IMG/VR virus record: IMGVR_UViG_3300023278_002893
Location: 124,001 to 188,000 of that record
DNA length: 64,000 nucleotides
Direction: 5' to 3' (one strand)
Shown here: positions 39,301 to 61,248 of the stretch, piece after piece
How positions within the stretch are numbered: the stretch's first letter is position 1
How the letters are laid out: every line of letters begins with the position of its first letter
Program-made: the position numbers and the translations under genes
Notes under the pieces: model-generated
What the model saw: the letters and a program-made list of their open reading frames with translations, nothing else
The model's database searches: none
Told to the model about the DNA's origin: nothing

Positions 39301-42300
39301 TCTTATTGAGTGTGTCCAGATCTCGATTTCTTTTATCTGAGGTTCCTGCAGTCCCTCGAAGAAGTTTAGCAAACTCAGGCACTGCGACAGCTAGCTTCTC
39401 CAAACCACTGAGTTCTTTAAAGGACTTGCCGAGATCTATGCTGGGGACAGCGCCCATACCCTTCATCGCGCCGCCAGAGCCTGTTATAAATTTGTTCTTG
39501 TTAGCTTCGGCCCGTTCGTAGTCGGCAGCGGCCGTAGCTGCGTCTTTTAAGGTAATGTTAAGCTTCTCTTGCATCTTCTGGTAATTACCCAGAACAGAGA
39601 GGAAGAAACCCTCCTTCTGTAGTGTCGTTGCAAGCTGCAGAACTTCCTGAGTAACTACCTTTAGTGCCTTCCCGGAAGATGCTTGTCTCTTGTAAGTACC
39701 CTCAACATCCGTAAGTAGGTCTTCTCCGTACTCCTTGGTGAGGGCATTGAATTCGGACTGAATGTCTGCCAACCTCTGCATGTCCTCTGGAAGAGAACGC
39801 ATTACTCTCTGCTCCACAGACAGTTCTTTCTCACTGGCGGGTCCCAAGTTAGGCATCCCTCCCGTAGGAATACGAACTCCCGCCATAGCACCCGAGTACT
39901 GCATGGTCATAATCTTCTTAGTGTGTGCCTCAGCGGCATCCACTTCCTTCTTGGTCCAGGTCATGAAGTGGTGTGCGACATCTGCCTTTTCCAACTCCTT
40001 GACGACACCCTCCAATTCGGTGCCCATAACACTGGAGAGAGCCCCGGTGCTGGTTCTAAATTGCCAAATAGCCTTCTCGGTGCCTTCTTCAAGCGAGGAG
40101 AAAAGTGTCGTGACTCCTCCCGTTTTCAGGTCTGCAGCTGCTTGGGAAATAACGGCCATCTGACCCGCCTTAACTGGTGCTCCAGCACTGCCCGTTACCG
40201 CGCCTGAGCCGCTTGTAGCACCTATTCCTCTAGACAGGAATGCATTTGCTATAAGTCCAGAAGACTGAGTGTTCTGATAATCCAGAACCCCACCCAGGCC
40301 GGACTGCTTACCCATGAACTGGGTCATTACTGAACTACCAGTTGCCCCTCGACCGAAGGCACCCGCTTCCGCGGCATCGTTAATTTGACTTTGGAGTTGT
40401 GGGGTAATACTCCCCATAGCACTTTCCAAATCACCGAACTCAGGAATAGATTCAAAAACCCGTTTCATCTCATTGGCGGTGGCCAGAACTGCCTCGCGCT
40501 CAGCGCCTTCCTGCGCCACCAATTCATTCATTCTGGACTGGTTAACAAGGCTGTACTCACCAGACTTAGCCTGTTCGTTCATTATCTTCGAAAGTTTTTG
40601 AATTTCCTTTCTTGTGTCACGAAGCTTACCCATACCGCTTTGATCTTCGTTCGCGCCAGCCATGCCTCCAGTTGCGAAATTTGCAAACTTAGCGAAGCCC
40701 TGCTTCATGTTATCCAGTATTCCCTCCGCAGTGGTTAGCTCCTCTGCGAATTTAGATATAACATCTACCTTGAAGGCAGTGGTTATAGCGTTCTGGGCAT
40801 CTAATGCTGATACAGTAAGGGATTTGAAATTAGAATCTATTCCCAGAATGTAGTCGCCAGAATCTGAAATACCCTGGACCTTGGTAGGGTCTAGTGAAGC
40901 CATGCTATTACCTATGTCAGCCATCATGTTGTTGTACGTCTGGGCCGCGGTGGCGGCTCCCTTGAAGCGACCTTCACCTAATGCTGTACTCATAGCGGCA
41001 TCGTCCGCCATGGCTTCCTGAGCTTTCCCTACCTTAATAAAGGACAAAGCTAAACGATCAGCATTAACAGATTGGCTTCTTAGAGTCGACGCGGCGTCCT
41101 CGCTCCTCCCCATAACCTCCTCTACGGACTGCTCGTAATCTTTGGCTGATTGGGAGGCTTTCTGGTATGCCATATATGCACCGCCAAGAGCGGCGACAAC
41201 GGTCAGGATCGCGGCGGCGCCGACTGAGGTAACCATTGCGGCGCTGAAACCTTTCTGAGCGACGGTAGCGCCTAAGAATCCCTTTTCAGCCAACTTTGTT
41301 ACAAGCGACGTTCCGAGAAGACTATTCCCCAAACCATCAACTGCTCTTCTGGTGAGATGGGCAGTACTAGCGAATTTAGTCATCTCCTCAGTGCGGCCAG
41401 TCCCAGCACCTGCGGCGTCCCAGCCAGTCTTAGCGCTTGATTTGATTCCCGAGAGCAACTTAAAGGTACTGCTTCTACCCCCGCCAGTAGTACTCACCTC
41501 GTTACCTGAGAAAACATCCATAGTATCTGCGATCAGGTCAGCAGCCTTGTGGAAAGCCAATCCCATCGCAACAGCACCCATGGTGCTCTTCATAATCATG
41601 GGGTGTAGATCACCGACGAGTCCAACTAGTTTGGAGACACTCTGAATTGCACCAGTTGCCAATCCGAGACCGGTCTTACCAAACTCTAGTACAAGACCCT
41701 TAACACTTTCCTTGAGAACCGTAACATTCTTGGTGAATGTTTGCATCGCCAATCGGTTCTTTCTCATAGCAAAGCCCTGCGAGTTAGCAGCGTCAGCGCT
41801 AGCAAGCAAGGCTTCGTCGAAGTTATTCATCAAGACGATGAATGAGTTATAGTGTCTAATACCCGCCATTGCTTGAGCTAGATTGACTTGCTGTGCGCGA
41901 GTCATTCCGTCCCAAGAACCGGCTAATTCCTTGAGTATGCCCATAGCGGGTTTGAAATCACCGCCCACCTCCATACTACCAACGCCCATCTTGCCAAGTT
42001 CCTTCTGCGCAGTAGGCCGTCTCATCGCGCGGAACATGAACTTGGTGCTGGTTGCAACTTCCTTACCAGATTGTCGAGTTACAGCACCAATTGCAGTAAC
42101 CACTCCCATGAAGTCTTCAAAACCCACACCCGCCACTTGGGCGGCAGCACCGGAACGCTTAACCGCGTCTGCTAGATCCTTAGCTGTAATAGCGTGCCTG
42201 GCTGCAACAGCTGCCCAGGCATCAACAAACTCAGCCGACCCTGACACAGAGTCCCCGAAAACTTTATGAGCTGCTGTGAGAGCTTCCGTAGCTTCTACGG

Positions 42301-45300
42301 AAGTCAGAGTGGTAACATTAACAGCGAGCATGGTAGCGCGTGTGCGCTCCATGATCTTATTCATCTTCAAACCCTGCTGACCATAGACAACCATACCGTC
42401 TAATACATCTTCAATGCCAATTCCAAACTCGGATGCAAAATCAGATGCGGAATCCTGCATACGTTCGAAGTTGGTAACCGAGGTGTCCATCACCTTCTTC
42501 AACGCAGTGACCTTAGTCTCAACTTCGGTAATAACAGTGACCATTTGTCGAAAAGCTCTGATAGTACCATAAACGATACCGGTAGCAAATCCCCACTGAA
42601 CCACTCTTCTCAGAGAGTTTCTCATATGTCCAGTAAATTCTTTAGCGGCACTACCTGCGTTAGTAAGAGACACTACGTACTCATCACCGAACCTACGAGC
42701 AGACATTGTCAGTTTTTCAAGAACCGTGTTGCTCTCCTGATCTACAATCGGAAAGGACCCCTCTTTGGAAATTCTATTACCACCAATAGGCTTGAATCCC
42801 TGCTTGTGCATGGCGGTTAGCTGCTTTCCCCACTGCTCAGCTTGCGCTTCAATGTCTCTTCTCTGCTTATCATAAGACGCCTTCAGATCCATCCCGCCTG
42901 TTGCAGCAGCTTGAATGGGGCGGGAATCAGCAGCAGCGCGTGCGTGCTCTTCCGTAGTTCTGGGAACGGTACCTAACTTCTCATATGCTTTGTGTGCCTT
43001 ATTTGCCATGTCGGCCATTGCTTTGAGAATGTTTACTTGTTCGGAGTCGGGGCCACTGATTGTACCCATGAGAGATGACATTGCTTTTAGAATCGAGGAA
43101 ACCTTACCTAAGTTCTCTACAAGTGTCTCGGGGGACTGAGCAAGTTCATCCCAAATCTGAGTCCAAACCTTGGTCTTACTAATGCCAGCCTCAATCTGAT
43201 CCTTGGCGCTCATCAAGGTTTCACCCAGGCCTCCAAATTTTTCTTTGCTCTCACCACGACCCGCACTCTGCTTGATGATATCAGACCATGCAGATTTTCC
43301 AGGCTGAATTCGTAATTCGTCCGCGGCGGTGGGGAGCATTGCGCCAGAACGGCCCATAGCAATACCTGTCTGTTTGAATGTACCAGGTAGTTTAGTCTGC
43401 CCTAAAACCGCATACATTTGCTGAATAGTGTTGTTGAAGTGCTCTAGTAGCTCGGCGAATTCGGGGGTATCTGCCGCTCCTGAATCCCGAACCTGCTTTA
43501 TCATCTCTTGAAGACCCTTACCTTTGTTGATATACATCTGAAGCTCGGCAGCTTGGAATTCCTGCATCGCCGAGAGATACGCCTCGTTTCCCCGACGACC
43601 ACCACCACCTGCATCTTCGCCGACATCCTTCAATCCTTTCTTATATCCGAAAGCGGTTTCCTGGTAAATCTTCTTCATGTCTGCCATTCGGGCAGGATCT
43701 ACCCCACCCTCCTGTCCCATCTCACTGAGCATCAATCGCATAGACTCGGCGGGGACTTCCATTCCCGAAATGTTCTCGCCGGGGAATGAGATAGGACCCG
43801 CAGTGCGGGTACGTCCACCTTTTCGCTCACCGGCGACCAGCTTGAGATTATTACGTGCCTCCTTCAATGCCTGGTCAAATAATATCAACTCATCACTGAG
43901 CTTCCTATTGAGTTCTGCTCCGGGGTATCCTCCGGCAGAACGTATTTTATCCTGCGCCTCACCCCGGACCGTCTGTCCGTGGGTTTTAGTCACAGATGCT
44001 ATCATACCGCCAGCCTGTTTAAGAATATTTCCAGAAATACCACCAACCGCCTCATCTAATTCAGAAAACATCTTCATTAGAGCTTTTTGTACTTCGTCGG
44101 GGATGTCTCCGAAGATCTCCATCCACTTGGATGGGTTAGTAAGATGGGCTAGCAGCTCTTCAGCGACCATCTCGAAGTATTTCGTACCCTGTGCCTGTAT
44201 GGCTTCATCCGCAGTTTTACCTGCAAACTCTTTCAAATTACCTATACCAGAAACCTCAGCACCGCCACCACTCTCCCTTCGGATCTTACTCAACAGCTTT
44301 AATTTATCAGCGTTACGCCCTACCATTGTTAGTTGATTTGCCGCCTTTAGTATTAACGGCGCCGCCTGGCCTATAGCGGTACCACCATCGACGAGGGAGG
44401 CAGATATCTCATTGATACCAGATCTAACAGTCTTAGCACTCTTATGTATATTCTCATGAGCCAGTGTAGCACCCATATTGGATATAGCTTGGGTAACGAA
44501 CTCTATACCTTTAGCAGTGGTCGGAATTTCCCCAGCGTCTATACGCCCAAGCATCTTCAGAGCCATTTCCAGAGGCTTCATTCGGGAGGTTGCGCCGACG
44601 CTGATCTTTCCCTCGCCGGGGGCAGTTCCTGGTTTCTCACGATAAACACCCGCAACCTTCTTAGGATCTAAACCACTAGCAATAAAAAGCTCGTCGCTAA
44701 CTACACCGTACATTTGCTTGATATTAGCAATCCATGCAGAAAGTTTATCTACTATCTCTTTACCCACAGCAATAGGTTTACCCGGATCTTCTTCCAGATC
44801 CACCCCACCCTTCAGCGCCTGGGCGGTGTCGCTAAACAGCGTGTTGAGAATCTTAGAAGCGCGATCCTCCAGAGGCAGCCCCTCCATCTCTCGGGTGCCC
44901 TTCCTTCTAGACAATGCATAGGATTCAGGAATAATCTCACGAGGATCTAATCCCTCTATCTTGCCTTGATTCTGGGCAGTTTTGGTAGTTCTTTGTCTGA
45001 CGTACTCTGCAGCCGATGACGGGCTAGCGCCTTTATCTATCATGGCCTGGCGGGCATTCTCCTCCAGCATTTCCTGCATGCGTTTGAGCTGACCTCTAAG
45101 ATCCATCTTATCCAACAACTGCTGAATGACCTTCTCGTAATTACCCTTGTCTAATCCTTGACCCTCTTTGAGAACTCCCTCCTCAAGAGCCGTCTGTGTA
45201 AGTGCGGCTGGATCCTGAGACCTAAGCATGGGCTCCATCTCGGCAAACATTTGCTTATTATAACGTCCCATTTTACCAAAAGTATCACCACCCCCAGCAT

Positions 45301-48300
45301 CCATTCCTGCTATGATCCTAGCCATTCCGGAGGGTCCGGATGACAATGACTTTACAAGATCTTGTGGTCCCGCCATGTTGCCCGAACCGCTCTTAGCAGC
45401 TAAAGACTCATTAATGTTCATCATAATGTAATCGGAAGCTGTTGCAAATGCGTCTCCCGACATCTTAGCACCACCTACAACTGCGTTATAGAAAATGTTG
45501 AACACGTCCGAAAGAAGTCCTACAGAAAGCTTACCGCCGGTAAGTGCCAAGGTCTGCTCTCTTTCCGTTTCTGCGCTATCAGGCATGGCCACTGCGGCTT
45601 TATATGCATCCGGGCGCTTGGCGATTGCGCCGAATGCCTCGTTAGCGCCTTCCAAGCTAGAATAATCTTGATCTGCAGTTTCTATACTACCTATAATATT
45701 ACGCATAGCGGACTGCATGGAGAAACCGGTCTGTAAATAAATCTCCTTAGCTGTCTTCATGGCGTGTGCTGACTCTATCGTCATTGCCCCAAACAGCTTA
45801 GTGGCGTCACCGTCGAAGTCTAGGTTCATGGTTGCCGAATGAAAAGCATTAGTAAATTCATAAATAGCGCGGTTGGCTATTCCAAGATTCTTCCTAGCTT
45901 TGTCTGCGGCAGGACCCAGTCCGTTATTGGCTTTTATAACCTTCATAGAAGATGCCCGTAGGTCCTCAAAAGGTTTTTTTACCTTCTGAGCATCTTCGGT
46001 AGAGGACATTGCGAAGGTACCCGGAACACCCATCTTACCTTCAGGTAGTCGCCCCGTCTTATCCTCCATTATTTTAACAATCTGCTGGCTCGCGCCTCCT
46101 GTAACAGGATCGCGAAGATGCATACCTCTTTCCATAACCTTGTCAAGATCCTTCCCGCTTAGCTTCTGTCCCATAGCCTTAGCTTGTTTCTTAGCCAGAG
46201 ACCGCATCGTTGCGTAGTCTTTCTTGCTGAGAAGAATACCGTCTCGGGGGAGGACGTCCTTAGTCACCTGGAGAGACTTCATTCTATCCAGAGCCTCAAG
46301 CGCATCACTCGTATCCGCACCTGCCTTTCCTAAAGCCTTAAGATGTCTTTCCGCTCTCTTTATCTCGGAAGACATATCTACTGCATACTCAATAGCTTTA
46401 GAGTACTGCGCGTTGGCGAGACCCGAGCCACGAGTCTGTGCTACCTTTCGAGACTCTTCAAATGCAGGAGTTCCTGAGGTTCTACCGAATCCCTGAGAGG
46501 TGACCTCTTGTAGGAGCTGTCCTTTTACCTGATCCTGTCTTTCCCATTGTTTTTCCGTAAAAGCAGGGTCTTCGGCAGAAGCTGTGCCTACACGCTTAAG
46601 TGCGGCTTCTACAAGATCTAAACTCTTAAACAAACCACCTGTGCTTGCTATTGATCCGGTTTTTTTATTCTCCGCCCTGAAACCAAGCACGTCGCGCATT
46701 CTATTAATCTGTGCAACATCTCCCTTACCCCCACCCACATAATCTTCAGCGGACTGTCGATTAGTTTCTATCCTACCACCACGTCCAAAGTATTGTATAC
46801 CAGATTTCATCCCAAGACCTTTCATAGCCTTAACGAGAGGCATAAAAGTGTTCTTGAACTCCTTAACCATAGACTTGCCTTCGTCTGTATCCGGTCCCGC
46901 TTTCTTAATATCAGATATCTGCTGGTTCATTCTCTTAGTGAGGAATTCTGCAGATTCCCTATGCGCAGCCTCACTGTCTCTGGGAGTCAATTCTCCCCGG
47001 CCGCCTTTAATGTTCATGCTCTGCTGTCTAAGTTTTTCCAAAAGCCTGGTCAGTTTACTGGGATCCGCCAAACCTTCTTCGGTAGTACGCACATCCCGCT
47101 GGCCTACAGCCTTTCCCATTCCGGGGATAAAGAGCTCCTCTTGCCCTCCCCCTTTTTTAGGAAGCATCATACTAAAAGCCTGCTTCTGAAACTCAGGATC
47201 TGCTAGAGTACCTTTCATCATATCAGGTTCGGCGAATCCTCCCGGCATTGGTGAAAAATCTTCAGGTTTCATCTTCTTCAGGTTAGAAACGACGCTGGCA
47301 CCAGCGCCGCTCATACTAAGAAGCATCTTGCGATAATCATCCTGCGCGGAGATTACATGTTTACTACTTTTGTTCTGGGCTGCCATTGCAAAGGATAGGG
47401 TTTCCGCTCTCTGCTCAAGAGCTTTCATTGCCACGGGGTCTATGAATCTATCACGCTCGATTGACTCTCCGGTCTGACCTTCCTTCTCGATTCGATTCCA
47501 CGCTAACCTACCTGTAAGTACCTTACCGATTCCACCCGCAGCCAGAGCACCTGAAGTTTTCTCGAATGCTGATTCGGGGTCAAGTCCTAACTCCTTACCC
47601 ACCGCGCGGGCGGCGGGTGCCATCTCCAACCCGGGAGTTGCTTTCATAGCACCGGTTATCTTATCAAATATTGTTTGCGCAGCTACCTTACCTCCAGAAG
47701 CCATGCTGGTAGAAATCATTGCGATGATGTCTTGTAGGTCAGCACGTCTAATGAAACCTTCTGCGCTGGTAATTACGTCAGTGTCTTTACCTGCGCCGAA
47801 CTTTGCCATAGACTCGTCAGATACAACCTTAGCAATACTTTTACTTCCTGCAAAAGTTGAGAACTTAGAACCGGTAGTCGCTGCATTGAATTCATCGAAG
47901 ACGATCTCGAACATCTTCCTACCATTTCTAAAGACCTGCTTTAATTCCTTGATCTCCGCATAAGACCCCTTAAGGTTAAACTCAATGTCTTTACCCGCAG
48001 CATCTATGCCTAATTTCTGACCCTTCTGTAATCCCATTCCTACGACTAGGTCTTCCGAAAGATTTGAAACCGTTTCTTTATCTTCCTTGTACATACCCGC
48101 ACGTTTAGCTGCGGAAGCTCTCATCAAGATCTGATCTTCGTGAAGCTCCGGTATGTGTTTTTGAGACACTGCTGCAGTTTTAAAATTCAATGACGACGCA
48201 GAAATCTGACCCTGCTTCAATAGCTGCTTCATTAGAGGGGACACAATGTCAGGCATCTCACCGCCTTCCACCTTAGCAAATCCCTTCATAAAGTTAGTAC

Positions 48301-50029
48301 GCATCTGCTTACTAAACCCAGCACCACCTGCCAAGAGTTCGGCTACGGGCCTGGTCTGGACTTTACCTTGGACAGCCCCTCCCTCCGACAGACCACCAAG
48401 AGACTTAGCCATGTCAGCTGCGGCCTCCTCGGTGAGTCCAATCATGGAAACCACGTCGGCACCTGCGGCAACAAACTTACCGGAAGCGCGTGTCATGTCG
48501 TGGAGAATAGCAGCTATCTCACCGAGCTTACCAGCATCGGTGTCATGTTTCATTATCTTCTCGGTCTGTTTCTTGGAGGGGGTCCATTGAAGTTGGGACT
48601 CTCCCCCCTTTATAAACTGACCCATAGATTGATGTTTCTCATATCTAGACGCATCCCCGCCAATTCTCTTTCTAATCATCGAACGCGTCATCTGAACAGC
48701 AGTTTCTTGGGACCTGCCTGCTCTTCTGGCAATTACTTTAAGTTCACCCTCAACACCCTCCAGGGCGTGAGTAATACTATCAAGCCTTGTTACGTTGTTT
48801 CCCTGAATCTTAAGAACACTACCTATTATCTTCTCTGAACCCGCACCTGTCTTAATGGTAGGGACGGAACCAGGAGCCACGCGTACATCCCCAGGAGAGG
48901 GCAACCCCAGAGCAGCCTGAAGATTTTTACCTTTGAAACTAGGTAAAGCTGTTTCTATATCCTTACCTAAACGAACAAGAGCTTTGGATACCGTCTTAGC
49001 AGTCTGTTCTGCCTGTGCTTGGTAGTCAACTCGACCCTGCGTCCCACGGGGAGGTGAAGTTCTAGCCTCCTCCCTCTTAACGGTAGCCTGCTTAGTTCCC
49101 CTGCTGTCTATTTTAGGAACACCAGTAACAGACCGGGTCTGGGGAGTAACCAAACTACTATCTCTCCGGCCTCCCGTTTCACTACGAGTAGTTCTATCTC
49201 TTTGGATATTTCTGTTGGTGGCGCCCGCAGCGGGTTGGTTTTTGATAGTCTGTCTGGGGTCTCTCTGCGCTTTTCCAGCTCCAGAACCAACAATGCCGCC
49301 AGTCAGCGCGGCTCCCTGCTTATTTATCTTAGAGATAAATCGGGATCGCGCTGCGGCGGCAGTTCTTTCAGCGGCGGTCGAAGCTTCAATCGCCTTTATA
49401 TTATCTAAAGTAGCTTTTCTTTTGCGCTCCTCCAGTCTTACATTCTGCTCCAGGATACGACTAACTTTAGCCTGGGCACGTTGTAATTTCCTGGAAGTCT
49501 CAGTAGATTTATCACCTGCTTTTATTTCACGCGCAAGAGACTGGGCCCTCTTCTCAGCGGCTACGGCTGCTTTCTCGATACGCGCAACCCGTCCTGCTAA
49601 ACCTGATTCTATTTTACCTAGAGTCTTGTCACTCTTAGAAGAGGACGCCTGTGCGGCAGTTCCAGCGCGCGATGGTGTAGATTTTACAGGTGTGGAAACT
49701 TGTGTCTTAGACTGGCGCTGCGACTTATTAAGTGCAGCAGTTAGAGAAGATAAAGCAGATGTCATTTCTTTGGTAGACGCTTCAAAGCTCTTGAATTCAG
49801 ACCTAAGTACTTTACGTACATCCTTGGCAAAGTCTGCGCCCTTGACGCCTGTAGCCCCAGCTGCAGCTTTAACTGATCCAGAACTAGGACCGATAGCTCC
49901 AAGATTAACACCTTTAAGTGCGTTCTGGGTAGCGGACTTAACGGCTTTCTTTATTTGACCTTCTAGACCTTTGATACTAGTCTGATCAAGTTCTAGATCT
50001 ATACCAATCTTAAACTTTTCTTCTACCAA
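36365..50029 (-). CDS. Tape measure protein (4554 aa) fused to an N-terminal two-barrel RNA polymerase domain and a zincin-like metallopeptidase motif
   Basis: TTG start with GGAGG SD; follows the tail chaperones; TP901-type core from ~aa 2470 (RRVVQWG...ASEFG...AITAKDLADAVKRSGAAA...GKEVATSTK); RNAP motifs HEDQILM, GSKFSTFAGSKS, LRDP, NLDFDGD; HENIH...EELLAH. Confidence 0.88.
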   Translation of the reverse strand: MVEEKFKIGIDLELDQTSIKGLEGQIKKAVKSATQNALKGVNLGAIGPSSGSVKAAAGATGVKGADFAKDVRKVLRSEFKSFEASTKEMTSALSSLTAALNKSQRQSKTQVSTPVKSTPSRAGTAAQASSSKSDKTLGKIESGLAGRVARIEKAAVAAEKRAQSLAREIKAGDKSTETSRKLQRAQAKVSRILEQNVRLEERKRKATLDNIKAIEASTAAERTAAAARSRFISKINKQGAALTGGIVGSGAGKAQRDPRQTIKNQPAAGATNRNIQRDRTTRSETGGRRDSSLVTPQTRSVTGVPKIDSRGTKQATVKREEARTSPPRGTQGRVDYQAQAEQTAKTVSKALVRLGKDIETALPSFKGKNLQAALGLPSPGDVRVAPGSVPTIKTGAGSEKIIGSVLKIQGNNVTRLDSITHALEGVEGELKVIARRAGRSQETAVQMTRSMIRKRIGGDASRYEKHQSMGQFIKGGESQLQWTPSKKQTEKIMKHDTDAGKLGEIAAILHDMTRASGKFVAAGADVVSMIGLTEEAAADMAKSLGGLSEGGAVQGKVQTRPVAELLAGGAGFSKQMRTNFMKGFAKVEGGEMPDIVSPLMKQLLKQGQISASSLNFKTAAVSQKHIPELHEDQILMRASAAKRAGMYKEDKETVSNLSEDLVVGMGLQKGQKLGIDAAGKDIEFNLKGSYAEIKELKQVFRNGRKMFEIVFDEFNAATTGSKFSTFAGSKSIAKVVSDESMAKFGAGKDTDVITSAEGFIRRADLQDIIAMISTSMASGGKVAAQTIFDKITGAMKATPGLEMAPAARAVGKELGLDPESAFEKTSGALAAGGIGKVLTGRLAWNRIEKEGQTGESIERDRFIDPVAMKALEQRAETLSFAMAAQNKSSKHVISAQDDYRKMLLSMSGAGASVVSNLKKMKPEDFSPMPGGFAEPDMMKGTLADPEFQKQAFSMMLPKKGGGQEELFIPGMGKAVGQRDVRTTEEGLADPSKLTRLLEKLRQQSMNIKGGRGELTPRDSEAAHRESAEFLTKRMNQQISDIKKAGPDTDEGKSMVKEFKNTFMPLVKAMKGLGMKSGIQYFGRGGRIETNRQSAEDYVGGGKGDVAQINRMRDVLGFRAENKKTGSIASTGGLFKSLDLVEAALKRVGTASAEDPAFTEKQWERQDQVKGQLLQEVTSQGFGRTSGTPAFEESRKVAQTRGSGLANAQYSKAIEYAVDMSSEIKRAERHLKALGKAGADTSDALEALDRMKSLQVTKDVLPRDGILLSKKDYATMRSLAKKQAKAMGQKLSGKDLDKVMERGMHLRDPVTGGASQQIVKIMEDKTGRLPEGKMGVPGTFAMSSTEDAQKVKKPFEDLRASSMKVIKANNGLGPAADKARKNLGIANRAIYEFTNAFHSATMNLDFDGDATKLFGAMTIESAHAMKTAKEIYLQTGFSMQSAMRNIIGSIETADQDYSSLEGANEAFGAIAKRPDAYKAAVAMPDSAETEREQTLALTGGKLSVGLLSDVFNIFYNAVVGGAKMSGDAFATASDYIMMNINESLAAKSGSGNMAGPQDLVKSLSSGPSGMARIIAGMDAGGGDTFGKMGRYNKQMFAEMEPMLRSQDPAALTQTALEEGVLKEGQGLDKGNYEKVIQQLLDKMDLRGQLKRMQEMLEENARQAMIDKGASPSSAAEYVRQRTTKTAQNQGKIEGLDPREIIPESYALSRRKGTREMEGLPLEDRASKILNTLFSDTAQALKGGVDLEEDPGKPIAVGKEIVDKLSAWIANIKQMYGVVSDELFIASGLDPKKVAGVYREKPGTAPGEGKISVGATSRMKPLEMALKMLGRIDAGEIPTTAKGIEFVTQAISNMGATLAHENIHKSAKTVRSGINEISASLVDGGTAIGQAAPLILKAANQLTMVGRNADKLKLLSKIRRESGGGAEVSGIGNLKEFAGKTADEAIQAQGTKYFEMVAEELLAHLTNPSKWMEIFGDIPDEVQKALMKMFSELDEAVGGISGNILKQAGGMIASVTKTHGQTVRGEAQDKIRSAGGYPGAELNRKLSDELILFDQALKEARNNLKLVAGERKGGRTRTAGPISFPGENISGMEVPAESMRLMLSEMGQEGGVDPARMADMKKIYQETAFGYKKGLKDVGEDAGGGGRRGNEAYLSAMQEFQAAELQMYINKGKGLQEMIKQVRDSGAADTPEFAELLEHFNNTIQQMYAVLGQTKLPGTFKQTGIAMGRSGAMLPTAADELRIQPGKSAWSDIIKQSAGRGESKEKFGGLGETLMSAKDQIEAGISKTKVWTQIWDELAQSPETLVENLGKVSSILKAMSSLMGTISGPDSEQVNILKAMADMANKAHKAYEKLGTVPRTTEEHARAAADSRPIQAAATGGMDLKASYDKQRRDIEAQAEQWGKQLTAMHKQGFKPIGGNRISKEGSFPIVDQESNTVLEKLTMSARRFGDEYVVSLTNAGSAAKEFTGHMRNSLRRVVQWGFATGIVYGTIRAFRQMVTVITEVETKVTALKKVMDTSVTNFERMQDSASDFASEFGIGIEDVLDGMVVYGQQGLKMNKIMERTRATMLAVNVTTLTSVEATEALTAAHKVFGDSVSGSAEFVDAWAAVAARHAITAKDLADAVKRSGAAAQVAGVGFEDFMGVVTAIGAVTRQSGKEVATSTKFMFRAMRRPTAQKELGKMGVGSMEVGGDFKPAMGILKELAGSWDGMTRAQQVNLAQAMAGIRHYNSFIVLMNNFDEALLASADAANSQGFAMRKNRLAMQTFTKNVTVLKESVKGLVLEFGKTGLGLATGAIQSVSKLVGLVGDLHPMIMKSTMGAVAMGLAFHKAADLIADTMDVFSGNEVSTTGGGRSSTFKLLSGIKSSAKTGWDAAGAGTGRTEEMTKFASTAHLTRRAVDGLGNSLLGTSLVTKLAEKGFLGATVAQKGFSAAMVTSVGAAAILTVVAALGGAYMAYQKASQSAKDYEQSVEEVMGRSEDAASTLRSQSVNADRLALSFIKVGKAQEAMADDAAMSTALGEGRFKGAATAAQTYNNMMADIGNSMASLDPTKVQGISDSGDYILGIDSNFKSLTVSALDAQNAITTAFKVDVISKFAEELTTAEGILDNMKQGFAKFANFATGGMAGANEDQSGMGKLRDTRKEIQKLSKIMNEQAKSGEYSLVNQSRMNELVAQEGAEREAVLATANEMKRVFESIPEFGDLESAMGSITPQLQSQINDAAEAGAFGRGATGSSVMTQFMGKQSGLGGVLDYQNTQSSGLIANAFLSRGIGATSGSGAVTGSAGAPVKAGQMAVISQAAADLKTGGVTTLFSSLEEGTEKAIWQFRTSTGALSSVMGTELEGVVKELEKADVAHHFMTWTKKEVDAAEAHTKKIMTMQYSGAMAGVRIPTGGMPNLGPASEKELSVEQRVMRSLPEDMQRLADIQSEFNALTKEYGEDLLTDVEGTYKRQASSGKALKVVTQEVLQLATTLQKEGFFLSVLGNYQKMQEKLNITLKDAATAAADYERAEANKNKFITGSGGAMKGMGAVPSIDLGKSFKELSGLEKLAVAVPEFAKLLRGTAGTSDKRNRDLDTLNKIEKQMSDFETSVTDMAKAGDSMTSEQKKRLAGSGEKTSAGQLEMIRGMNKLADDFTDIGGRQLSVQNSMLEALHELTYIQSLPEGDRAEAFASVMSKKSFKEKTSAFGEVLGGGAMNDVFKKVLNIIPDADGNLRAGANAPSHPQMKNIVALMNGMQQFEGRGMIDVPLSDTADGQPTQQFWSQKDLQSNLADRMAEVFENDGKAASGLTTEMIKSSSPQDMSKAKAAKQLKASKDLDAAKAKSIQWENSVRASHLEAQAKAIKALEDSNNKLQADIPAIRLADAAINFATTLNDMVRDFEKADSQIINKIDSDLDGPMARVGQAGFRTSFENKRRDIEKQFGSGGRTTLADMRAKKQALKDVDFDEKEAVIQQKQSIETTALRSQQQKAERVRSTLADVMFDPGQSDDLKAKAQKYFDILGEELATSEQATKKGRDDKLFFKGLPSLEGLSKFAGSITQEAQDLSKKAARQAGVEDMATGMIPTNAILTTSVGLQREQLSALETLTNKAADPTSGIRMGASAIPAPGGVATSGPETIKNKWNEQELAAMVAGPGTKSTGPTLGLSMQGGFGTKPPTAGTFAQLAGGRPGESTYTGQLKAADRGSELTAGEKQISAMRIIQKGIDSGEHVYRGRESGVLSSTELAGTGTVNLNAGMRRINPMVGLTNNNLAAEANASARFGDDAASPSNVIRKEDGSAPGTRDDPADRVTRGGTGDGGSSEALSALNDSIASLNEVIGGLASQGVTLPESFSSDIASIGSDITEALGETLTVTIDGEPAVTVSNIDELAVAATEAATGAAGADITALGVRVDAVEGLTDTSGPLNESILALEEDVSTLESKQTLTTSNLDALTLEVSTFSTTIELATTTSQAASESATLATEASSSATSAAATATTVATAATENVSVLAEQITDLSTAVGDNKQGIEAEVRQINTEITTAETARKSDKQLLGEIGQRASTALTQASQALSLAQAGRGN

Positions 50030-50056: not shown

Positions 50057-51145
50057 TCATCTAGAGCCGCCCCTCATGGCAGACTTAGACTTAGCCCTTG
50101 AGCGTCTGTTCCTAGAACGACGACTATTAGGGTTAATAACTTCCACCTCTGAGGTTCCTTCAGCGATCTTTAGTCTTTCTTCACTATACGCTAATTTCAT
50201 ATACTCAGGATGGGATGGTGTGATAATCAACTCCTCGCCTCTCTCCCATGCGTTTAACTTACCGCCCTTATTGCCTCCTCGACCTGCTGCCTTTCCTTCT
50301 GTCTTTTCCTGTTCTCTATTCTTAAAGTAATCACCCATGTACTCATCAAGCTTCTCGTCATCTTCTATTATTTCTTGAGAAGGCTGATCGTCTGGGAGCA
50401 TCTCATAAATGGACTGGTAATAATTACTCCAATATAAGAGAGACATTTGATCGGGGGTCAGGTCCAACAATCCATCTTGGAATAACTGCTGACCCATCTT
50501 AGTAGCTGCAGTGTATCTTATACGCCACAGACTATGACGCGCTAAAAAGCGAATGGATTTGGAGGGCAACCCCACGTTAAATTTAGTAAAGTTTTCAAAA
50601 AGAGAAGCTCTCAAATCATGTCGAGTCTCGTCTTCAAATTCCTTAAAAGTATCCCAAAAACGTTCTCCAGTTACTGCGTAAGTGGAAGCCCAGGTCAAGA
50701 ATATAAAAGACTCCTCGTCCGCCTTCCTCTCCTGCGAAAGATAAAGAATATTATGAACCTTATTCTGAAGCGGCGCTGCTTGATCTTGGAGGCGCTCTAT
50801 GTTTTCCTGGATCTGATCTTTACGGGCATCAATTGATGTCATCTCCAGAACAGACGTCTGGGCCTCGATCTTCTCCTGTATCTCTTTCAGCGTATCCTTA
50901 TCTTCTTGAGTAGTTACCTTTTCAGACAACCCCTCTGCTTCTTCGAGAGTGGGAAGACCTTCCTCCTGCGCTGTGAGCAAAGCCTTGTCTCTCATATAGC
51001 GACTGAGAAGTAAATCTTGCGCTTTAGGAAAACAAAATATTATAAATTCTACTCCTCCAATGTAGTCTAGACGGGTAAGACGTTTGTTGGAAATTATAGA
51101 ATCAAGCAAAGCCTCTATTTCCTGAAAAGGAAGCTCCTCAATCAT
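50057..51145 (-). CDS. Tail assembly chaperone-like protein (GT-like), paralog of the upstream gene with a C-terminal extension
   Basis: Lies between the tail tube and tape measure genes; N-terminal ~190 aa align with 51148..52020. Confidence 0.6.
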   Translation of the reverse strand: MIEELPFQEIEALLDSIISNKRLTRLDYIGGVEFIIFCFPKAQDLLLSRYMRDKALLTAQEEGLPTLEEAEGLSEKVTTQEDKDTLKEIQEKIEAQTSVLEMTSIDARKDQIQENIERLQDQAAPLQNKVHNILYLSQERKADEESFIFLTWASTYAVTGERFWDTFKEFEDETRHDLRASLFENFTKFNVGLPSKSIRFLARHSLWRIRYTAATKMGQQLFQDGLLDLTPDQMSLLYWSNYYQSIYEMLPDDQPSQEIIEDDEKLDEYMGDYFKNREQEKTEGKAAGRGGNKGGKLNAWERGEELIITPSHPEYMKLAYSEERLKIAEGTSEVEVINPNSRRSRNRRSRAKSKSAMRGGSR

Positions 51146-51147
51146 TA

Positions 51148-52020
51148 TTAAGCCTTGGGAGTTTCCTCAGGAGCGGGCTCTTCCTTCTTCTTTCGAGGAC
51201 GTCCTCGCTTCTTAGGTGCCGGCTTCACAGCAGCGGCTTTCTTCTTAGGAGCTTTCTTCTTCTTTGGTTTCGCATCTACTGCGTCCAAAGATAGCTCCTC
51301 AGAAGTATCTTCCTCCACGTCAGCGTCAGCATCAGGATTTTCCTCTTCTGCTTCTGCTCTTGCAGTGTCAATGGCACGGGTTAGTCTATCCTGTGCTATG
51401 TCTCTAAGAGCAGACTGCTCAGGGGTATTCTCTAGGAAATTACTTTCTAATCCCTGAATCCAAAGCATGACTTCGAATCTGGACTTTACGGAAAGTGCGG
51501 AGTTCTCTTCATTCTGGTAAGAATCAAAGTCTTCCCAAAGAACAGAACCATCCTTCTCCTGGACAATACGGGATGTTAGATACTCGTTACGGGCGTCGTC
51601 TGCCAGATTCTCACAGGTGTTTCCCATAGGACCATTCACCTGCTGGTTAAGAGAAAACAACTCGTCGCGCAATCTAGCTATCTCAAGTGCTAGTCCCTCA
51701 CGTTCTAGTTCGGGGGCGGTATCACTAACGTTTTCTAGTTTAAATAGTTCGGAAGCTAGTCCGATCCTGGTACTCTCCACCTTCATCGCGTAGTCCTCGG
51801 AAAGAATACCCTTCTCTCTTAGAACATCCACCATCTGTGCTTGGGTAAGAAACCCATCTACGATGGCTTGGTTATAAATCTTAGAGTATTGCCAGTCTGC
51901 CTTTCGAACATCAGCAGCGCTTGGCTGTGCGATGAAGAAAGAAACATCTTCACCCTCCACGGGTGCGGTAAATTCACGTCTAGAATCCAGAACGTCTTTA
52001 ACGTTTTTGGCAGTTGCCAT
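51148..52020 (-). CDS. Tail assembly chaperone-like protein (G-like) with acidic stretch and K-rich/AT-hook tail
   Basis: Position; helical acidic body; C-terminal PKKKKAPKKKAAAVKPAPKKRGRPRKKK. Confidence 0.6.
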   Translation of the reverse strand: MATAKNVKDVLDSRREFTAPVEGEDVSFFIAQPSAADVRKADWQYSKIYNQAIVDGFLTQAQMVDVLREKGILSEDYAMKVESTRIGLASELFKLENVSDTAPELEREGLALEIARLRDELFSLNQQVNGPMGNTCENLADDARNEYLTSRIVQEKDGSVLWEDFDSYQNEENSALSVKSRFEVMLWIQGLESNFLENTPEQSALRDIAQDRLTRAIDTARAEAEEENPDADADVEEDTSEELSLDAVDAKPKKKKAPKKKAAAVKPAPKKRGRPRKKKEEPAPEETPKA

Positions 52021-59441: not shown

Positions 59442-59954
59442 TTAAATTTCAGACATAAATTCTTCTGCGGTCTTAGTGTGTTTCCTAAGATTACAACTAG
59501 GACACGCAAGGCATAAATTAGACCAAGTGTGCTTACCTCCCCTAGAAAGGGGCAGTTTGTGATCTAAATGAGAATTTTCTTCAATAGAAACACTGCAATA
59601 AAAACACATCTTATCTTGTACACACGAGAGTAGTTCTATCATGCCACTAAAAATAAATCCTAAATTATTATCCTTAAGTGCTCGTCTTTTTTGGGCATAT
59701 TCTCTAAATTTAAGTTTATTAGATTTCTGATATTCAGATTGTTTTGATGGATATTTATCCCTATAAGATTCACTATATTCTCTGTGCATTATTTTCTTTC
59801 TCTCTATGTTGCACTTATAATACTTATTATTTCTAAGTTTATCTATCTCCGATACACACTCTTTACACTGAGATTTAAATCCATTTTTAGAAGAACTATT
59901 TTTATAGAATTCATTCTTTCTCTTTAGCACCTTGCATGTACTACATATTTTCAT
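59442..59954 (-). CDS. HNH homing endonuclease (170 aa), intact motif
   Basis: CSTC..CKEC; CFYC...SHLDHKLPLSRGGKHTWSNLCLACPSCNLRKH; AT-rich; same family as 28497..29093. Confidence 0.9.
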   Translation of the reverse strand: MKICSTCKVLKRKNEFYKNSSSKNGFKSQCKECVSEIDKLRNNKYYKCNIERKKIMHREYSESYRDKYPSKQSEYQKSNKLKFREYAQKRRALKDNNLGFIFSGMIELLSCVQDKMCFYCSVSIEENSHLDHKLPLSRGGKHTWSNLCLACPSCNLRKHTKTAEEFMSEI

Positions 59955-60180: not shown

Positions 60181-61248
60181 TTAACTTCGGTCAATAACAC
60201 CAAGCTGGGTCATTCGAGAGTCGAGAAGGGCGAACCCTACCTCTTCCCATCCGAAGAATCCCTGCTTCTGCTGTCGAAGCAAGCTCGGGTCATCGTGCGC
60301 CTCGAACTCCTTTCGTACAGGCATAACAAGCGAATCATTAACGGAGAGATCAAATCCATAGACCTGGGTCTCACCTGCAGTGGTAACGTTTCCGTTAGCA
60401 TCCACGGTGTTAATGTTCGTTGGGGTGTAATCATTGAAGTCGCCGGAACCATCTACCTGGAAGATACCATAAGAAGCGCCGTTCTGGTTGATGTTGAATC
60501 GACCAGTAGCACCAAGCTGGAATACCTCATGTAGATTTACGTTCCAGATTCGACCCATACCAGCAGCCGTGAAAATCTCTCGGCGGGTGATCGGATCAAC
60601 CTGAGTATCGGTCCACTCACGAATGTCAGCGGCGTCCTCAGGGGAAATGTATAGGTCAGTAAGGGAGCGTCGAACTCTCTTCATTCCTACCATCATCAGG
60701 TTCAGGAGCTCCTTCGAGAGGAACTTCTCACCGGTAGATCCGGAGGGAACCTGGAAAACAGGAGCATTGCGAGCGCCAAGGAGACCCTGGCCTGCGAAGT
60801 CAGTAGTAGCACCGGGGACAATTACTCGCCATCCGGACTCCTCTTCGTAGTCTGCAATAGATCGTGCTGCGTTTCGAGCTGCTCGCTCGGGGATATCAAT
60901 GCGTGAGTCGCGTGCGTAGGTTACCTTCCAATCCGCAGATACTGCGATGGAGAAAGTAGGTACGTACACTTCCTCACCAACACCCTCAACGAAGTTCTGT
61001 GCGATATATCCGAGTCCCGGAAGTACGAATACCGGAACGTCGAAGTCGTCAGCAACTGGATATACAGCCTGTGCGCCTGGCGCCAATCGCTCAACAGCAA
61101 AGAGCTGTCGCATGATGGACGCGTCTCGAATCTCCTGGAGAATCGGGACAGTAAGAGCCTGCGCAAAGGCTTTGTATGCTTCAACACCCTCGGGAGTGTC
61201 GATAGCTGCAGTTGCTTGGAACATTTCCTGTAGCTTTGTTCTATCCAT
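60181..61248 (-). CDS. Major capsid protein (HK97-fold expected, 355 aa)
   Basis: Follows scaffold and decoration genes; AFAQALTVPILQEIRDASIMRQLFAVE, LYISPEDAADIREW, GFFGWEEVGFALLD; downstream terminator. Confidence 0.85.
   Translation of the reverse strand: MDRTKLQEMFQATAAIDTPEGVEAYKAFAQALTVPILQEIRDASIMRQLFAVERLAPGAQAVYPVADDFDVPVFVLPGLGYIAQNFVEGVGEEVYVPTFSIAVSADWKVTYARDSRIDIPERAARNAARSIADYEEESGWRVIVPGATTDFAGQGLLGARNAPVFQVPSGSTGEKFLSKELLNLMMVGMKRVRRSLTDLYISPEDAADIREWTDTQVDPITRREIFTAAGMGRIWNVNLHEVFQLGATGRFNINQNGASYGIFQVDGSGDFNDYTPTNINTVDANGNVTTAGETQVYGFDLSVNDSLVMPVRKEFEAHDDPSLLRQQKQGFFGWEEVGFALLDSRMTQLGVIDRS

What the first reader, a model, noticed from the sequence alone, without database searches (positions are those of the whole stretch)
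45700..48300. Single-chain two-barrel RNA polymerase embedded in the N-terminal half of the tape measure protein
Seen in sequence, in the correct order: (1) beta-like H-E631-D632-QILM, compare GYNxEDxI; (2) G-S-K722-FSTFAGS-K730-SIAKVVSDESM...DVITSAEGFIRR, compare beta GDKxxxRHGNKG...DMP...DxxxNPxGxxSR, with the same K-x7-K spacing; (3) beta'-like L-R1306-D-P, compare NRxP; (4) N1402-LDFDGD at 45826-45806, compare NADFDGD, with all three metal-binding Asp present. A TP901-type tape measure core starts ~aa 2470 of the same ORF. Established: these motifs define two-barrel RNAPs, crAss-like phages carry single-chain virion RNAPs, and a tape-measure-fused virion RNAP is known from Thermus phage P23-45, so the concept has precedent. 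Inference: this phage packs an RNAP in its tail and injects it ahead of the DNA to transcribe early genes. It may represent a different lineage, and automated annotation would probably label it only 'tape measure'.
Basis: partly seen in the sequence, partly recalled or inferred. Interest (0 to 1): 0.92.

Follow-up and report, generated by a model that had tools for sequence, protein, structure and literature searches.

The report
RNA polymerase built into phage tape measure
An uncultured ~298-kb phage carries a cellular-type RNA polymerase module inside the front part of its 4,554-residue tail tape measure protein, plus a free-standing sister polymerase elsewhere in its genome. This is the layout known so far only from Thermus phage P23-45, and I found no sequence link between the two cases.

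Summary
One uninterrupted ORF (window 36365-50029, minus strand, 4,554 aa) holds all four motif groups at the stated positions. It also holds a TP901-type tape measure core (Pfam PF10145, E 5e-25).

- **Conservation.** In 22-26 relatives down to about 24% identity, E631/D632, G720/K722/G728/K730, R762, R1306/P1308/T1310/G1311/S1314 and N1402/D1404/D1406/G1407/D1408 are invariant.
- **Structure.** An AlphaFold2 model of aa 520-1700 (pLDDT 83.7, pTM 0.74) matches second-largest RNAP subunits (Foldseek E 4e-9, 371 hits). The beta'-like half modelled alone gives only beta' chains as top hits, but at weak E-values (0.02-0.15).
- **Sister gene.** The same 297,725-bp contig encodes a stand-alone 1,054-aa single-chain RNAP. 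It passes both Pfam RNAP thresholds and is the module's nearest non-tape-measure relative (hhalign 98.4%, E 1e-14).
- **Relation to P23-45.** No sequence similarity to gp96 or gp64 was detectable, so this looks like a second lineage of tape-measure-fused virion RNAP.

Catalysis, packaging and injection are inferred, not shown. Two further features are conserved across the family: an invariant HExxH...E signature after the polymerase, and a total lack of cysteine.

Verdict: real, interpretation supported, a new variant of a known kind.

The parts
36365..50029 (-). Giant tape measure gene, 4,554 aa, TTG start, no internal stop. The whole architecture (basic N-terminus, RNAP module, HExxH region, TMP core, long C-terminal tape) is conserved in about 20 clusters of 3,841-5,420 aa.
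48470..50029 (-). N-terminal region, aa 1-520. It is strongly basic (net about +44) and rich in Ala/Ser/Lys, and the model has low confidence where it overlaps this region. Conserved from residue 1 in close relatives.
44930..48352 (-). RNAP-like module, aa about 560-1700. Confidently folded in the AlphaFold2 model (pLDDT 83.7, pTM 0.74).
46550..48352 (-). Beta-like (second-largest-subunit-like) half, aa about 560-1160. Aligns to the stand-alone RNAP family and matches Rpb2/beta chains structurally.
48134..48139 (-). E631-D632, the beta 'ED' motif within P-E-x-x-E-D-Q. Invariant in 23 of 23 sequences.
47840..47872 (-). G720-x-K722-x5-G728-x-K730, the two active-site lysines of the beta barrel. 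All four are invariant. hhalign places them on E. coli beta GDKMAGRHGNKG.
47744..47746 (-). R762, end of EGFIRR. Invariant in 24 of 24 sequences. Corresponds to the Arg of the beta '...SR' segment in the hhalign register.
44930..46432 (-). Beta'-like half, aa about 1200-1700. Holds the catalytic loop, then a 33-residue helix and helical bundles. Modelled alone it reaches pLDDT 71.6. The 50 best PDB matches are all RNAP beta' chains, but at E 0.02-0.15.
46088..46114 (-). R1306-x-P1308-x-T1310-G1311-x-x-S1314, counterpart of beta' NRxPxLH. Invariant in 24 of 24 sequences. A helical hairpin of about 55 residues lies between it and the catalytic loop, so the spacing is 98 aa, against about 38 aa in the stand-alone paralogue.
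45806..45826 (-). N1402-L-D1404-F-D1406-G-D1408, the metal-binding loop of the beta' barrel. N, the three D and G are invariant in 22 of 22 sequences.
45476..45574 (-). Candidate bridge helix, aa 1486-1518 (model helix 967-999). Carries conserved K1500, G1504, D1508 and N1511. The assignment is inferred from position and length only.
44444..44458 (-). H1858-E-x-x-H1862, a zincin-type signature. Present exactly once in each of 22 family members. Function untested.
44156..44161 (-). E1957-E1958, about 95 aa after HExxH. E1958 is invariant. Candidate third zinc ligand (gluzincin-like), inferred.
41111..42718 (-). Tape measure core, aa 2438-2973 (PHROG 4211). Pfam PF10145 PhageMin_Tail covers aa 2525-2723 (window 41861-42457).
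41162..41251 (-). The only strongly hydrophobic segment, aa 2927-2956. Candidate membrane-inserting helix of the tape.
36365..37279 (-). C-terminal acidic region, aa 4251-4554 (net about -30), rich in Ala/Thr/Ser.
52431..54311 (-). 626-aa gene upstream of the tape measure. Tail-tube-like by language-model and structure neighbours (Phage_tube_2, Phi812 tube, Phage_tail_2). This is a lead, not a test.
50057..52020 (-). Two genes (290 and 362 aa) between the tube gene and the tape measure, in the position of tail assembly chaperones. Inferred from gene order only; no family hit.
60181..61248 (-). Major head protein (PHROG 2522, E 1e-12). It shows that the tape measure lies in a head-tail structural module on the same strand.

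Best explanation
The N-terminal third of this phage's tape measure protein (aa about 560-1700) is a single-chain two-barrel DNA-dependent RNA polymerase. The beta-like barrel comes first and the beta'-like barrel second.

**Shown**
- It is a homologue of cellular-type RNAP catalytic subunits.
- It keeps every catalytic signature under strong conservation.
- It is covalently part of a bona fide tape measure protein.
- The same genome holds a free-standing paralogue.

**Inferred, by analogy with Thermus phage P23-45 gp96/gp64 (PMC10770324)**
- The tape measure, with the polymerase at its head-proximal N-terminus, is stored in the tail tube in an extended or unfolded state. The protein has no cysteine at all, whereas its free-standing paralogue has 14.
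- On infection it is ejected ahead of the DNA, the polymerase refolds at the cytoplasmic end of the channel, and it transcribes the first-entering genes without the host enzyme.
- One product of that first wave would be the stand-alone polymerase, which then takes over.
- The invariant HExxH...E region just after the polymerase may be a zinc peptidase that processes the tape or the cell wall. This is speculative.
For: - **Motifs and position:**
- **Invariance:** the ED pair, both Lys, R762, RxPxTG and NxDFDGD are invariant across homologues at 24-68% identity.
- **Whole-module fold:** the AlphaFold2 model has pLDDT 83.7 and pTM 0.74. Foldseek against PDB gives 371 hits at E<=1e-3. The top 50 are all second-largest subunits of Pol I/II/III, archaeal, vaccinia and ASFV RNAPs, at E 4e-9 to 4.5e-8, probability 1.00 and 360-413 aligned columns. 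BFVD gives viral RNAP beta subunits at E about 1e-9.
- **Beta' half alone:** all 50 best PDB hits are RNAP beta' chains.
- **Profile search:** the module profile, run against 1.84 billion proteins, finds as its only non-tape-measure relatives about 1,000-aa proteins. Those proteins pass Pfam RNA_pol_Rpb2_6 and hit bacterial beta in PDB.
- **Profile-profile comparison:** hhalign of the module against that family gives 98.8%, E 6e-17 over 395 columns, and 81.8%, E 1e-5 around DFDGD.
- **Same-genome paralogue:** L015:4797-7961 passes both Pfam RNAP domains (28.4 bits against a cutoff of 23.4, and 27.4 against 25.3). It aligns to the module at 98.4%, E 1e-14.
- **Co-occurrence:** a second contig of about 296 kb also carries both genes.
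- **Tape measure identity and gene order:**
- **Fusion is real:** it is conserved in about 20 clusters from independent samples.
- **Cysteine:** none in 4,554 aa, against 0.67% in neighbouring structural proteins (P about 5e-14) and 14 in the paralogue.
Against: - There is no biochemical or virion-proteome evidence, and the phage is uncultured.
- The module itself passes no Pfam RNAP threshold. The best result is a sub-threshold Rpb1_2 hit in 4 of 27 members.
- Profile searches against PDB sequences return only designed helical repeats.
- The beta'-like half gives only marginal Foldseek E-values (0.02-0.15) with poor superposition. When modelled alone, its catalytic loop has pLDDT below 50.
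- I could not measure whether the three Asp and the two Lys face one another in the model.
- TM-scores to RNAP subunits are low (about 0.2) because only part of each chain aligns.
- No promoter-like repeated motif was found.
- How a module of about 130 kDa fits in a tail tube is unexplained here, as it is for P23-45.
Confidence: 0.75

Rival explanations
1. The module is an exapted, catalytically dead RNAP relic. It would serve as a structural plug, a DNA-end binding domain or a channel component of the tape measure, not as a polymerase.
For: - The module is very divergent and passes no Pfam threshold.
- It carries a helical-hairpin insertion of about 55 residues inside the beta' barrel.
- The phage already owns a more canonical stand-alone RNAP.
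Against: - Every residue needed for catalysis is invariant over sequences that have diverged to about 24% identity: three Asp, the preceding Asn, both Lys, the ED pair and RxP. A structural relic would not hold these fixed.
- The only experimentally studied analogue, gp96, is active (PMC10770324).
Confidence: 0.08
2. It is an active two-barrel polymerase with a different job. It could be an RNA-dependent RNA polymerase like QDE-1, a primer-synthesising enzyme for replication, or a DNA-pulling motor whose transcripts do not matter.
For: - The two-barrel superfamily includes RNA-dependent and DNA-synthesising members (PMC10770324, sections 11-12).
- Nothing here identifies the template or the product.
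Against: - The best structural matches are DNA-dependent RNAP second-largest subunits. QDE-1, crAss gp66 and PolD are not among the top 50.
- The nearest sequence relatives pass the Pfam Rpb2_6 and Rpb1_2 models.
- The motif set (NxDFDGD, GxKx5GxKG, RxPxT) is the cellular DNA-dependent type.
Confidence: 0.08
3. The fusion or the motifs are artefacts. Either these are chance motif matches in a long low-complexity helical protein, or an assembly chimera joins an RNAP gene to a tape measure gene.
For: - Tape measure proteins are long and compositionally biased.
- One relative (L030) appears split into two ORFs.
- A language-model search sees only 'tape measure' features.
Against: - The motif is expected 0.02 times per window.
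- The motifs are invariant and the fold is confident.
- The same continuous architecture occurs in about 20 clusters from different samples and sources.
- The L030 split is a scaffold N-gap with duplicated flanks, not a real break.
Confidence: 0.01

Closest known systems
Thermus phage P23-45 gp96, a tape-measure-fused virion RNAP, with its non-virion partner gp64 (PMC10770324; PDB 8H2N, 8H2M, 8F72)
   Same: - A giant tape measure protein (5,002 vs 4,554 aa) with a single-chain two-barrel RNAP in its N-terminal part, preceded by a dispensable or disordered N-terminus.
- A DFDGD catalytic loop.
- A second, free-standing RNAP elsewhere in the genome that is the fused module's closest relative.
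- No cysteine in the tape measure.
- Automated annotation names it only as a tape measure protein.
   Different: - No detectable sequence similarity to gp96 or gp64 (phmmer against PDB; hhalign). No P23-45 structure is among the 50 best Foldseek hits.
- The module here is larger (about 1,150 aa vs about 800) and lies further in (DFDGD at 1404 vs 779).
- It keeps the full cellular-type motif set (N before DFDGD, GxKx5GxKG, ED).
- It has an HExxH signature, whereas the P23-45 GenBank record and paper describe only an unspecified metallopeptidase domain.
- The host genome is about 298 kb against 84 kb.
- The environment looks marine and mesophilic, on weak evidence, rather than a hot spring.
Multisubunit cellular and viral RNAP catalytic subunits: beta/Rpb2 and beta'/Rpb1 (Pfam PF00562, PF00623)
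   Same: - The best structural matches of the module are Rpb2-type chains, and all top hits of the second half are beta' chains.
- Motifs are in the same order and register as E. coli beta K1065/K1073 and beta' NADFDGD.
   Different: - Both halves lie in one polypeptide, in beta-then-beta' order.
- Most accessory domains are missing.
- No Pfam threshold is passed.
- The module is fused to a virion structural protein.
Unnamed stand-alone single-chain RNAPs of about 1,000 aa from uncultured phages (P0037, P0038, P0041, P0042; L015:4797-7961 in this same phage)
   Same: - Nearest relatives by profile search.
- Nearly identical motif wording: PExFEDQIL, GxKxxNxHGNKG, MNLDFDGD.
- They co-occur with the fused form in two contigs of about 296-298 kb.
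   Different: - They are free-standing and contain 12-19 Cys each. P0042 is the exception, with none.
- They pass the Pfam RNAP thresholds.
- They lack the helical insertion before DFDGD.
- They lie in a replication/modification gene neighbourhood (helicase, COOH-NH2 ligase).
- They have no match in 50,697 GenBank phage records.
crAss-like phage phi14:2 gp66 and N4 gp50 virion RNAPs
   Same: Polymerases packaged in the virion as part of very large proteins and delivered with the DNA for early transcription (as discussed in PMC10770324).
   Different: - gp66 is a capsid/cargo protein of a podovirus-like phage and belongs to the QDE-1-like clade. It is not among the top 50 structural hits.
- N4 gp50 is a T7-like single-subunit enzyme, not a two-barrel one.
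- Neither is fused to a tape measure protein.

Membership tests
Two-barrel (double-psi beta-barrel) RNAP superfamily | Beta'-type catalytic loop (N)xDxDGD with three metal-binding Asp | tested here: met
   N1402-L-D-F-D-G-D1408. N, the three D and G are invariant in 22 of 22 homologues. hhalign places it on E. coli beta' NADFDGD.
Two-barrel (double-psi beta-barrel) RNAP superfamily | Beta-type barrel with two conserved Lys (GxKx5GxKG) and the upstream ED pair | tested here: met
   E631/D632 in 23 of 23, G720/K722 in 23 of 23, G728/K730 in 24 of 24. The register matches E. coli beta GDKMAGRHGNKG.
Two-barrel (double-psi beta-barrel) RNAP superfamily | Fold of the second-largest-subunit catalytic region | tested here: met
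   Model pLDDT 83.7, pTM 0.74. Foldseek E 4e-9, probability 1.00, 360-413 columns to Rpb2/beta-type chains, with 371 PDB hits at E<=1e-3. BFVD viral RNAP beta subunits at E about 1e-9.
Two-barrel (double-psi beta-barrel) RNAP superfamily | Fold of the largest-subunit (beta') barrel | tested here: inconclusive
   The half-model has pLDDT 71.6, and its catalytic loop is below 50. All 50 best PDB hits are RNAP beta' chains, but at E 0.02-0.15. One local match has probability 0.99 over 186 columns.
Two-barrel (double-psi beta-barrel) RNAP superfamily | The two barrels face each other and form one active site | not testable with these tools
   Model coordinates are not exposed. Only pTM 0.74 for the whole module argues for a single packed body.
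Two-barrel (double-psi beta-barrel) RNAP superfamily | Significant sequence-profile match to curated RNAP models (Pfam PF00562 / PF00623) | tested here: not met
   The module matches no RNAP family at threshold, with sub-threshold Rpb1_2 in 4 of 27 members. The link is met only transitively. The stand-alone paralogue passes both models, and the module aligns to it at hhalign 98.4%, E 1e-14.
Two-barrel (double-psi beta-barrel) RNAP superfamily | Template-dependent RNA synthesis | not testable with these tools
   Needs biochemistry.
P23-45 gp96-type tape-measure-fused virion RNAP (Oshimavirus lineage) | RNAP module in the N-terminal part of a giant tape measure protein | tested here: met
   Module at aa 560-1700, upstream of the PF10145 core at aa 2525-2723, in one ORF.
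P23-45 gp96-type tape-measure-fused virion RNAP (Oshimavirus lineage) | Sequence homology to gp96 | tested here: not met
   phmmer against PDB sequences (the paper deposited gp96 as 8H2M and 8H2N) found nothing. hhalign of the 5- and 27-sequence profiles against gp96 residues 1-1200 gave probability 0.2-0.3%. tblastn against all GenBank phages gave no match.
P23-45 gp96-type tape-measure-fused virion RNAP (Oshimavirus lineage) | A paralogous non-virion RNAP in the same genome | tested here: met
   L015:4797-7961 lies on the same contig. The same pairing occurs on contig 3300022719_000329. The partner shows no similarity to gp64.
P23-45 gp96-type tape-measure-fused virion RNAP (Oshimavirus lineage) | Presence in virions and transcription of pre-early genes | not testable with these tools
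   The phage is uncultured and no usable sequencing run was found.
TP901-family tail tape measure protein (PF10145) | PhageMin_Tail domain above the Pfam threshold, in a tail gene cluster | tested here: met
   88.9 bits against a cutoff of 33.2. PHROG 4211 E 2.9e-79. Head protein and tube-like gene lie upstream on the same strand.
Zincin (HExxH) metallopeptidase, for the region after the polymerase | HExxH plus a downstream third ligand, and a zincin fold | tested here: inconclusive
   H1858, E1859, H1862 and E1958 are invariant in 22 of 22.
crAss gp66 / QDE-1 clade of single-chain two-barrel polymerases | Closest structural similarity to gp66 (6VR4) or QDE-1 (2J7N) | tested here: not met
   Neither is among the 50 best PDB matches, which are all Rpb2-type subunits. 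Ranks below 50 were not visible.

The most novel reading that the evidence does not exclude
A lineage of uncultured, probably marine, phages of about 296-298 kb with very long tails arrived independently at the two-polymerase infection programme of P23-45. In this reading, a cellular-type single-chain RNAP was duplicated. One copy was fused to the head-proximal end of the tape measure, purged of all cysteines and given a helical insertion, so that it can travel unfolded through the tail and refold in the host. A conserved HExxH...E zinc peptidase next to it cuts the polymerase free of the tape, or opens the wall, after ejection. If so, tape-measure delivery of a transcription machine would be a recurrent solution rather than a Thermus-phage oddity.
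Probability: 0.3. Interest if true: 0.8.

Novelty: new variant of a known kind. Interest (0 to 1): 0.62.

Why it matters
In the paper library I searched, P23-45 and its close Thermus-phage relatives are the only described case of an RNA polymerase carried on a tape measure protein.

This finding adds a second, sequence-unrelated family of about 20 clusters at 50% identity. It occurs in jumbo-sized genomes and again has a free-standing sister polymerase.

- The fusion therefore looks like a repeatable strategy for host-independent early transcription in long-tailed phages.
- It gives an independent system for asking how a polymerase of about 130 kDa is stored in, and released from, a tail tube. 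The complete absence of cysteine and the adjacent HExxH region are concrete handles for that question.
- It adds a compact, cellular-type single-chain RNAP pair for evolutionary and biotechnological study.
- It shows that 'tape measure protein' annotations can hide enzymes that current domain libraries miss.

Tried and rejected
- **Direct sequence routes to known RNAPs failed.**
  - Pfam and PHROGs on the whole ORF returned only the tape measure core.
  - phmmer and a 27-sequence profile against PDB sequences returned nothing, or designed helical repeats.
  - megablast and tblastn against 50,697 GenBank phages gave no match.
  - hhalign against single E. coli beta and beta' put the motifs in the right register but was not significant.
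- **ESM Atlas searches were uninformative.** The module scored as 'tape measure' at low recognition, and the HExxH region gave nothing.
- **No link to P23-45.** hhalign against gp96 and gp64 found nothing.
- **The 2,208-aa neighbour is not a second RNAP.** The gene at 6845-13471 has no DxDxD and no family hit, and is Cys-rich, so it is probably a tail or baseplate protein.
- **No second RNAP inside the 64-kb window.** A six-frame HMM search found none. The partner gene lies elsewhere on the contig.
- **An apparent natural split is an artefact.** The beta-like and beta'-like halves look separate in a relative (L030), but the break is a scaffold N-gap.
- **Promoter and motif hunt found nothing above background**, both around the stand-alone RNAP and upstream of the tail genes.
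- **No tRNAs in the window**.
- **Sequencing runs.** None was listed for the RNAP region. Only weak partial holders (share <=0.14) were listed for the capsid gene, so I did not use read laying.
The 22-sequence half-alignment worked.
Full report
**1. What is in the sequence**

The flagged interval lies inside one uninterrupted minus-strand ORF, window 36365-50029. It has a TTG start and encodes 4,554 aa. The DFDGD loop is encoded at 45826-45806 as claimed. A tape measure core follows: Pfam PF10145 at aa 2525-2723 (88.9 bits against a cutoff of 33.2) and PHROG 4211 'tail length tape measure protein' at aa 2438-2973 (E 2.9e-79).

The gene sits in a same-strand structural module. Upstream are a major head protein (PHROG 2522), a 626-aa tail-tube-like gene (language-model and structure neighbours only) and two small genes in the chaperone position. 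Large unannotated tail-end proteins lie downstream. No sheath-sized gene precedes the tube gene, so a long non-contractile tail is plausible but not shown.

A D[FYW]DGD match is expected 0.02 times per shuffled window.

**2. Conservation**

- A word-indexed search found four full-length relatives (45-66% identity, 4,448-5,420 aa). All carry PF10145, and JGI names two of them only 'TP901 family phage tail tape measure protein'.
- A profile of aa 520-1700, searched against 1.84 billion representative proteins, found 40 hits. These include about 20 further giant proteins (3,841-5,285 aa) from independent clusters at 50% identity.
- Local phmmer shows these share the whole architecture.
- In the 27-sequence alignment A2 (24-68% identity to the query), the following are invariant: E631, D632, G720, K722, G728, K730, R762, R1306, P1308, T1310, G1311, S1314, N1402, D1404, D1406, G1407 and D1408.

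**3. Fold**

AlphaFold2 on A2 gave a confident model of aa 520-1700: mean pLDDT 83.7, pTM 0.74, with only the first 41 residues disordered.

- Foldseek against PDB returned 371 hits at E<=1e-3. The best 50 are all second-largest subunits of Pol I, II, III and IV, archaeal, vaccinia and ASFV RNAPs, at E 4e-9 to 4.5e-8, probability 1.00 and 360-413 aligned columns.
- Against BFVD the best hits are viral RNAP beta subunits (E about 1e-9). There is also a 1,161-column match to a fragment of a 'Minor tail protein' of an uncultured siphovirus.
- Low TM-scores (about 0.2) reflect partial coverage of large chains.
- Only 50 rows are shown, so I modelled the beta'-like half separately (aa 1170-1700, pLDDT 71.6). 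Its 50 best PDB hits are all RNAP beta' chains, but at E 0.02-0.15. One local match has probability 0.99 over 186 columns.

The first barrel is therefore well supported structurally. The second is supported by invariant motifs plus a consistent but weak fold signal.

In the secondary structure, the RxPxTG strand and the DFDGD loop are separated by a helical hairpin of about 55 residues. A 33-residue helix with conserved K1500, G1504, D1508 and N1511 follows the catalytic loop, where a bridge helix would be. That assignment is inference.

**4. Sequence link to recognised RNAPs**

The module itself passes no curated RNAP model and finds no RNAP in PDB by sequence.

The only non-tape-measure hits of its profile are proteins of about 1,000 aa (P0037, P0038, P0041, P0042) with DGTKxxNxHGNKG and LDFDGD. 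These pass Pfam RNA_pol_Rpb2_6 and hit bacterial beta in PDB.

hhalign of the module against this family gives 98.8%, E 6e-17 over 395 columns for the first half, and 81.8%, E 1e-5 around DFDGD. A profile of the stand-alone family hits the window ORF reciprocally (E 2e-15 within the window).

**5. A partner polymerase in the same genome**

Scanning IMG/VR with the stand-alone family returned a locus on the window's own contig (IMGVR_UViG_3300023278_002893, 297,725 bp). By my arithmetic the window is contig 124,001-188,000, and the partner gene lies at about 26.7-29.9 kb.

- Its 1,054-aa product passes both Pfam catalytic-domain thresholds: Rpb2_6 at 28.4 against 23.4, and Rpb1_2 at 27.4 against 25.3.
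- It aligns to the tape-measure module at 98.4%, E 1e-14, over 385 columns.
- Its motif wording is nearly the same.
- A second contig of 295,848 bp also has both genes, and a third sample has both on separate contigs.
- The partner lies beside a ResIII/DEAD helicase and a phiEco32-type COOH-NH2 ligase. The same neighbourhood occurs around P0037.

**6. Comparison with the known case**

Chaban et al. 2024 (PMC10770324) showed that P23-45 gp96, a 5,002-aa tape measure protein, carries an active two-barrel RNAP (core 327-1124, DFDGD 779-783). It transcribes pre-early genes, including that of the paralogous non-virion RNAP gp64.

The present phage has the same logic. However, I found no sequence similarity to gp96 or gp64, and no P23-45 structure is among the top 50 structural hits. 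Both RNAPs here are also absent from 50,697 GenBank phage records.

The motif set here is the cellular type. The paper places gp96 and gp64 in the other major clade, with crAss gp66 and QDE-1. I did not test clade placement formally. Four library searches found no other described tape-measure-RNAP fusion.

**7. Mechanism**

- **Shown:** homology, conserved catalytic residues, covalent fusion to a tape measure protein, and a co-resident paralogue.
- **Inferred:** the protein is packed in the tail, ejected before the DNA, and its polymerase starts host-independent transcription, probably including the partner polymerase gene.

Supporting circumstantial facts:
- There is no cysteine in 4,554 aa, against 0.67% in neighbouring structural proteins (P about 5e-14) and 14 Cys in the partner.
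- 21 of the 22 family members that carry the HExxH motif, the more distant P0033, and P23-45 gp96 all lack cysteine too.
- The N-terminal 500 residues are strongly basic.
- There is a single hydrophobic helix at aa 2927-2956.

**8. Unexplained extra**

About 160 residues after the module, every one of the 22 family members has exactly one HExxH (aa 1858-1862 here) and an invariant Glu about 95 residues later. This looks like a zincin signature.

**9. Verdict**

It is not a member of the gp96 sequence family, but it works, as far as can be inferred, like it: a new variant of a known kind. Biochemistry and virion proteomics are needed for the functional claims.

Noticed in passing
L015:4797-7961 (+), i.e. 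IMGVR_UViG_3300023278_002893 at about 26.7-29.9 kb, outside the window: The same phage genome encodes a stand-alone 1,054-aa single-chain RNAP. It passes both Pfam RNAP catalytic-domain thresholds and is the fused module's nearest relative. It is flanked by a ResIII/DEAD helicase and a phiEco32-type COOH-NH2 ligase.
   Followed up: yes
window 44444-44458 and 44156-44161 (minus strand; aa 1858-1862 and 1957-1958): An invariant HExxH plus a downstream invariant Glu occur once per protein in all 22 family members. This may be a zinc metallopeptidase next to the polymerase. No family or structure match was found.
   Followed up: partly
window 36365-50029 (minus strand): There are no cysteines in 4,554 residues, and none in 21 of the 22 HExxH-bearing family members, in the more distant P0033, or in P23-45 gp96. 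Neighbouring proteins and the stand-alone RNAP do contain Cys. This suggests selection linked to passage through the tail or periplasm.
   Followed up: partly
window 59442-59954 (minus strand): A 170-aa HNH / endonuclease VII-type gene (PHROG 1035, E 7e-30) lies just downstream of the major head gene, in the lowest-GC stretch of the window (0.39 at 58-60 kb). It is probably a homing endonuclease insertion.
   Followed up: no
window 6845-13471 (minus strand): A 2,208-aa ORF with 33 Cys, no family hit and no DxDxD. It lies at the distal end of the tail gene block and is likely a fibre or baseplate protein, not a polymerase.
   Followed up: partly
L030:3814-8001 (ENA scaffold of a relative): The relative's giant gene is called as two ORFs (1,389 and 4,119 aa), split between the two RNAP halves. 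The break is a run of N with duplicated flanking sequence, so it is an assembly artefact and not a natural beta/beta' split.
   Followed up: yes
L001 vs L002 (IMGVR_UViG_3300023278_003531, 196,567 bp, and _002893, 297,725 bp): Two contigs from the same sample carry a 100% identical RNAP module region. This may be an assembly duplicate or two closely related genomes.
   Followed up: no
BFVD hit A0A8S5SD80_1: A fragment of a 'Minor tail protein' from an uncultured Siphoviridae sp. aligns structurally over 1,161 columns (TMq 0.36, E 1.3e-8). This hints at further tape-measure-fused RNAP modules in other uncultured phages.
   Followed up: no
P0035 / P0044: A remote profile hit with LDFDGD lies at about aa 2040 of a 3,068-aa partial protein. 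Its cluster mate has 7,416 aa and is labelled '3'-5' exonuclease' in a Methanogenium MAG. This is another giant protein with an embedded RNAP-like loop.
   Followed up: no
window 60181-61248: Sampled words of the capsid gene occur only weakly (share <=0.14) in public runs. Those runs are mostly marine and marine-sediment metagenomes, a weak hint at habitat.
   Followed up: partly
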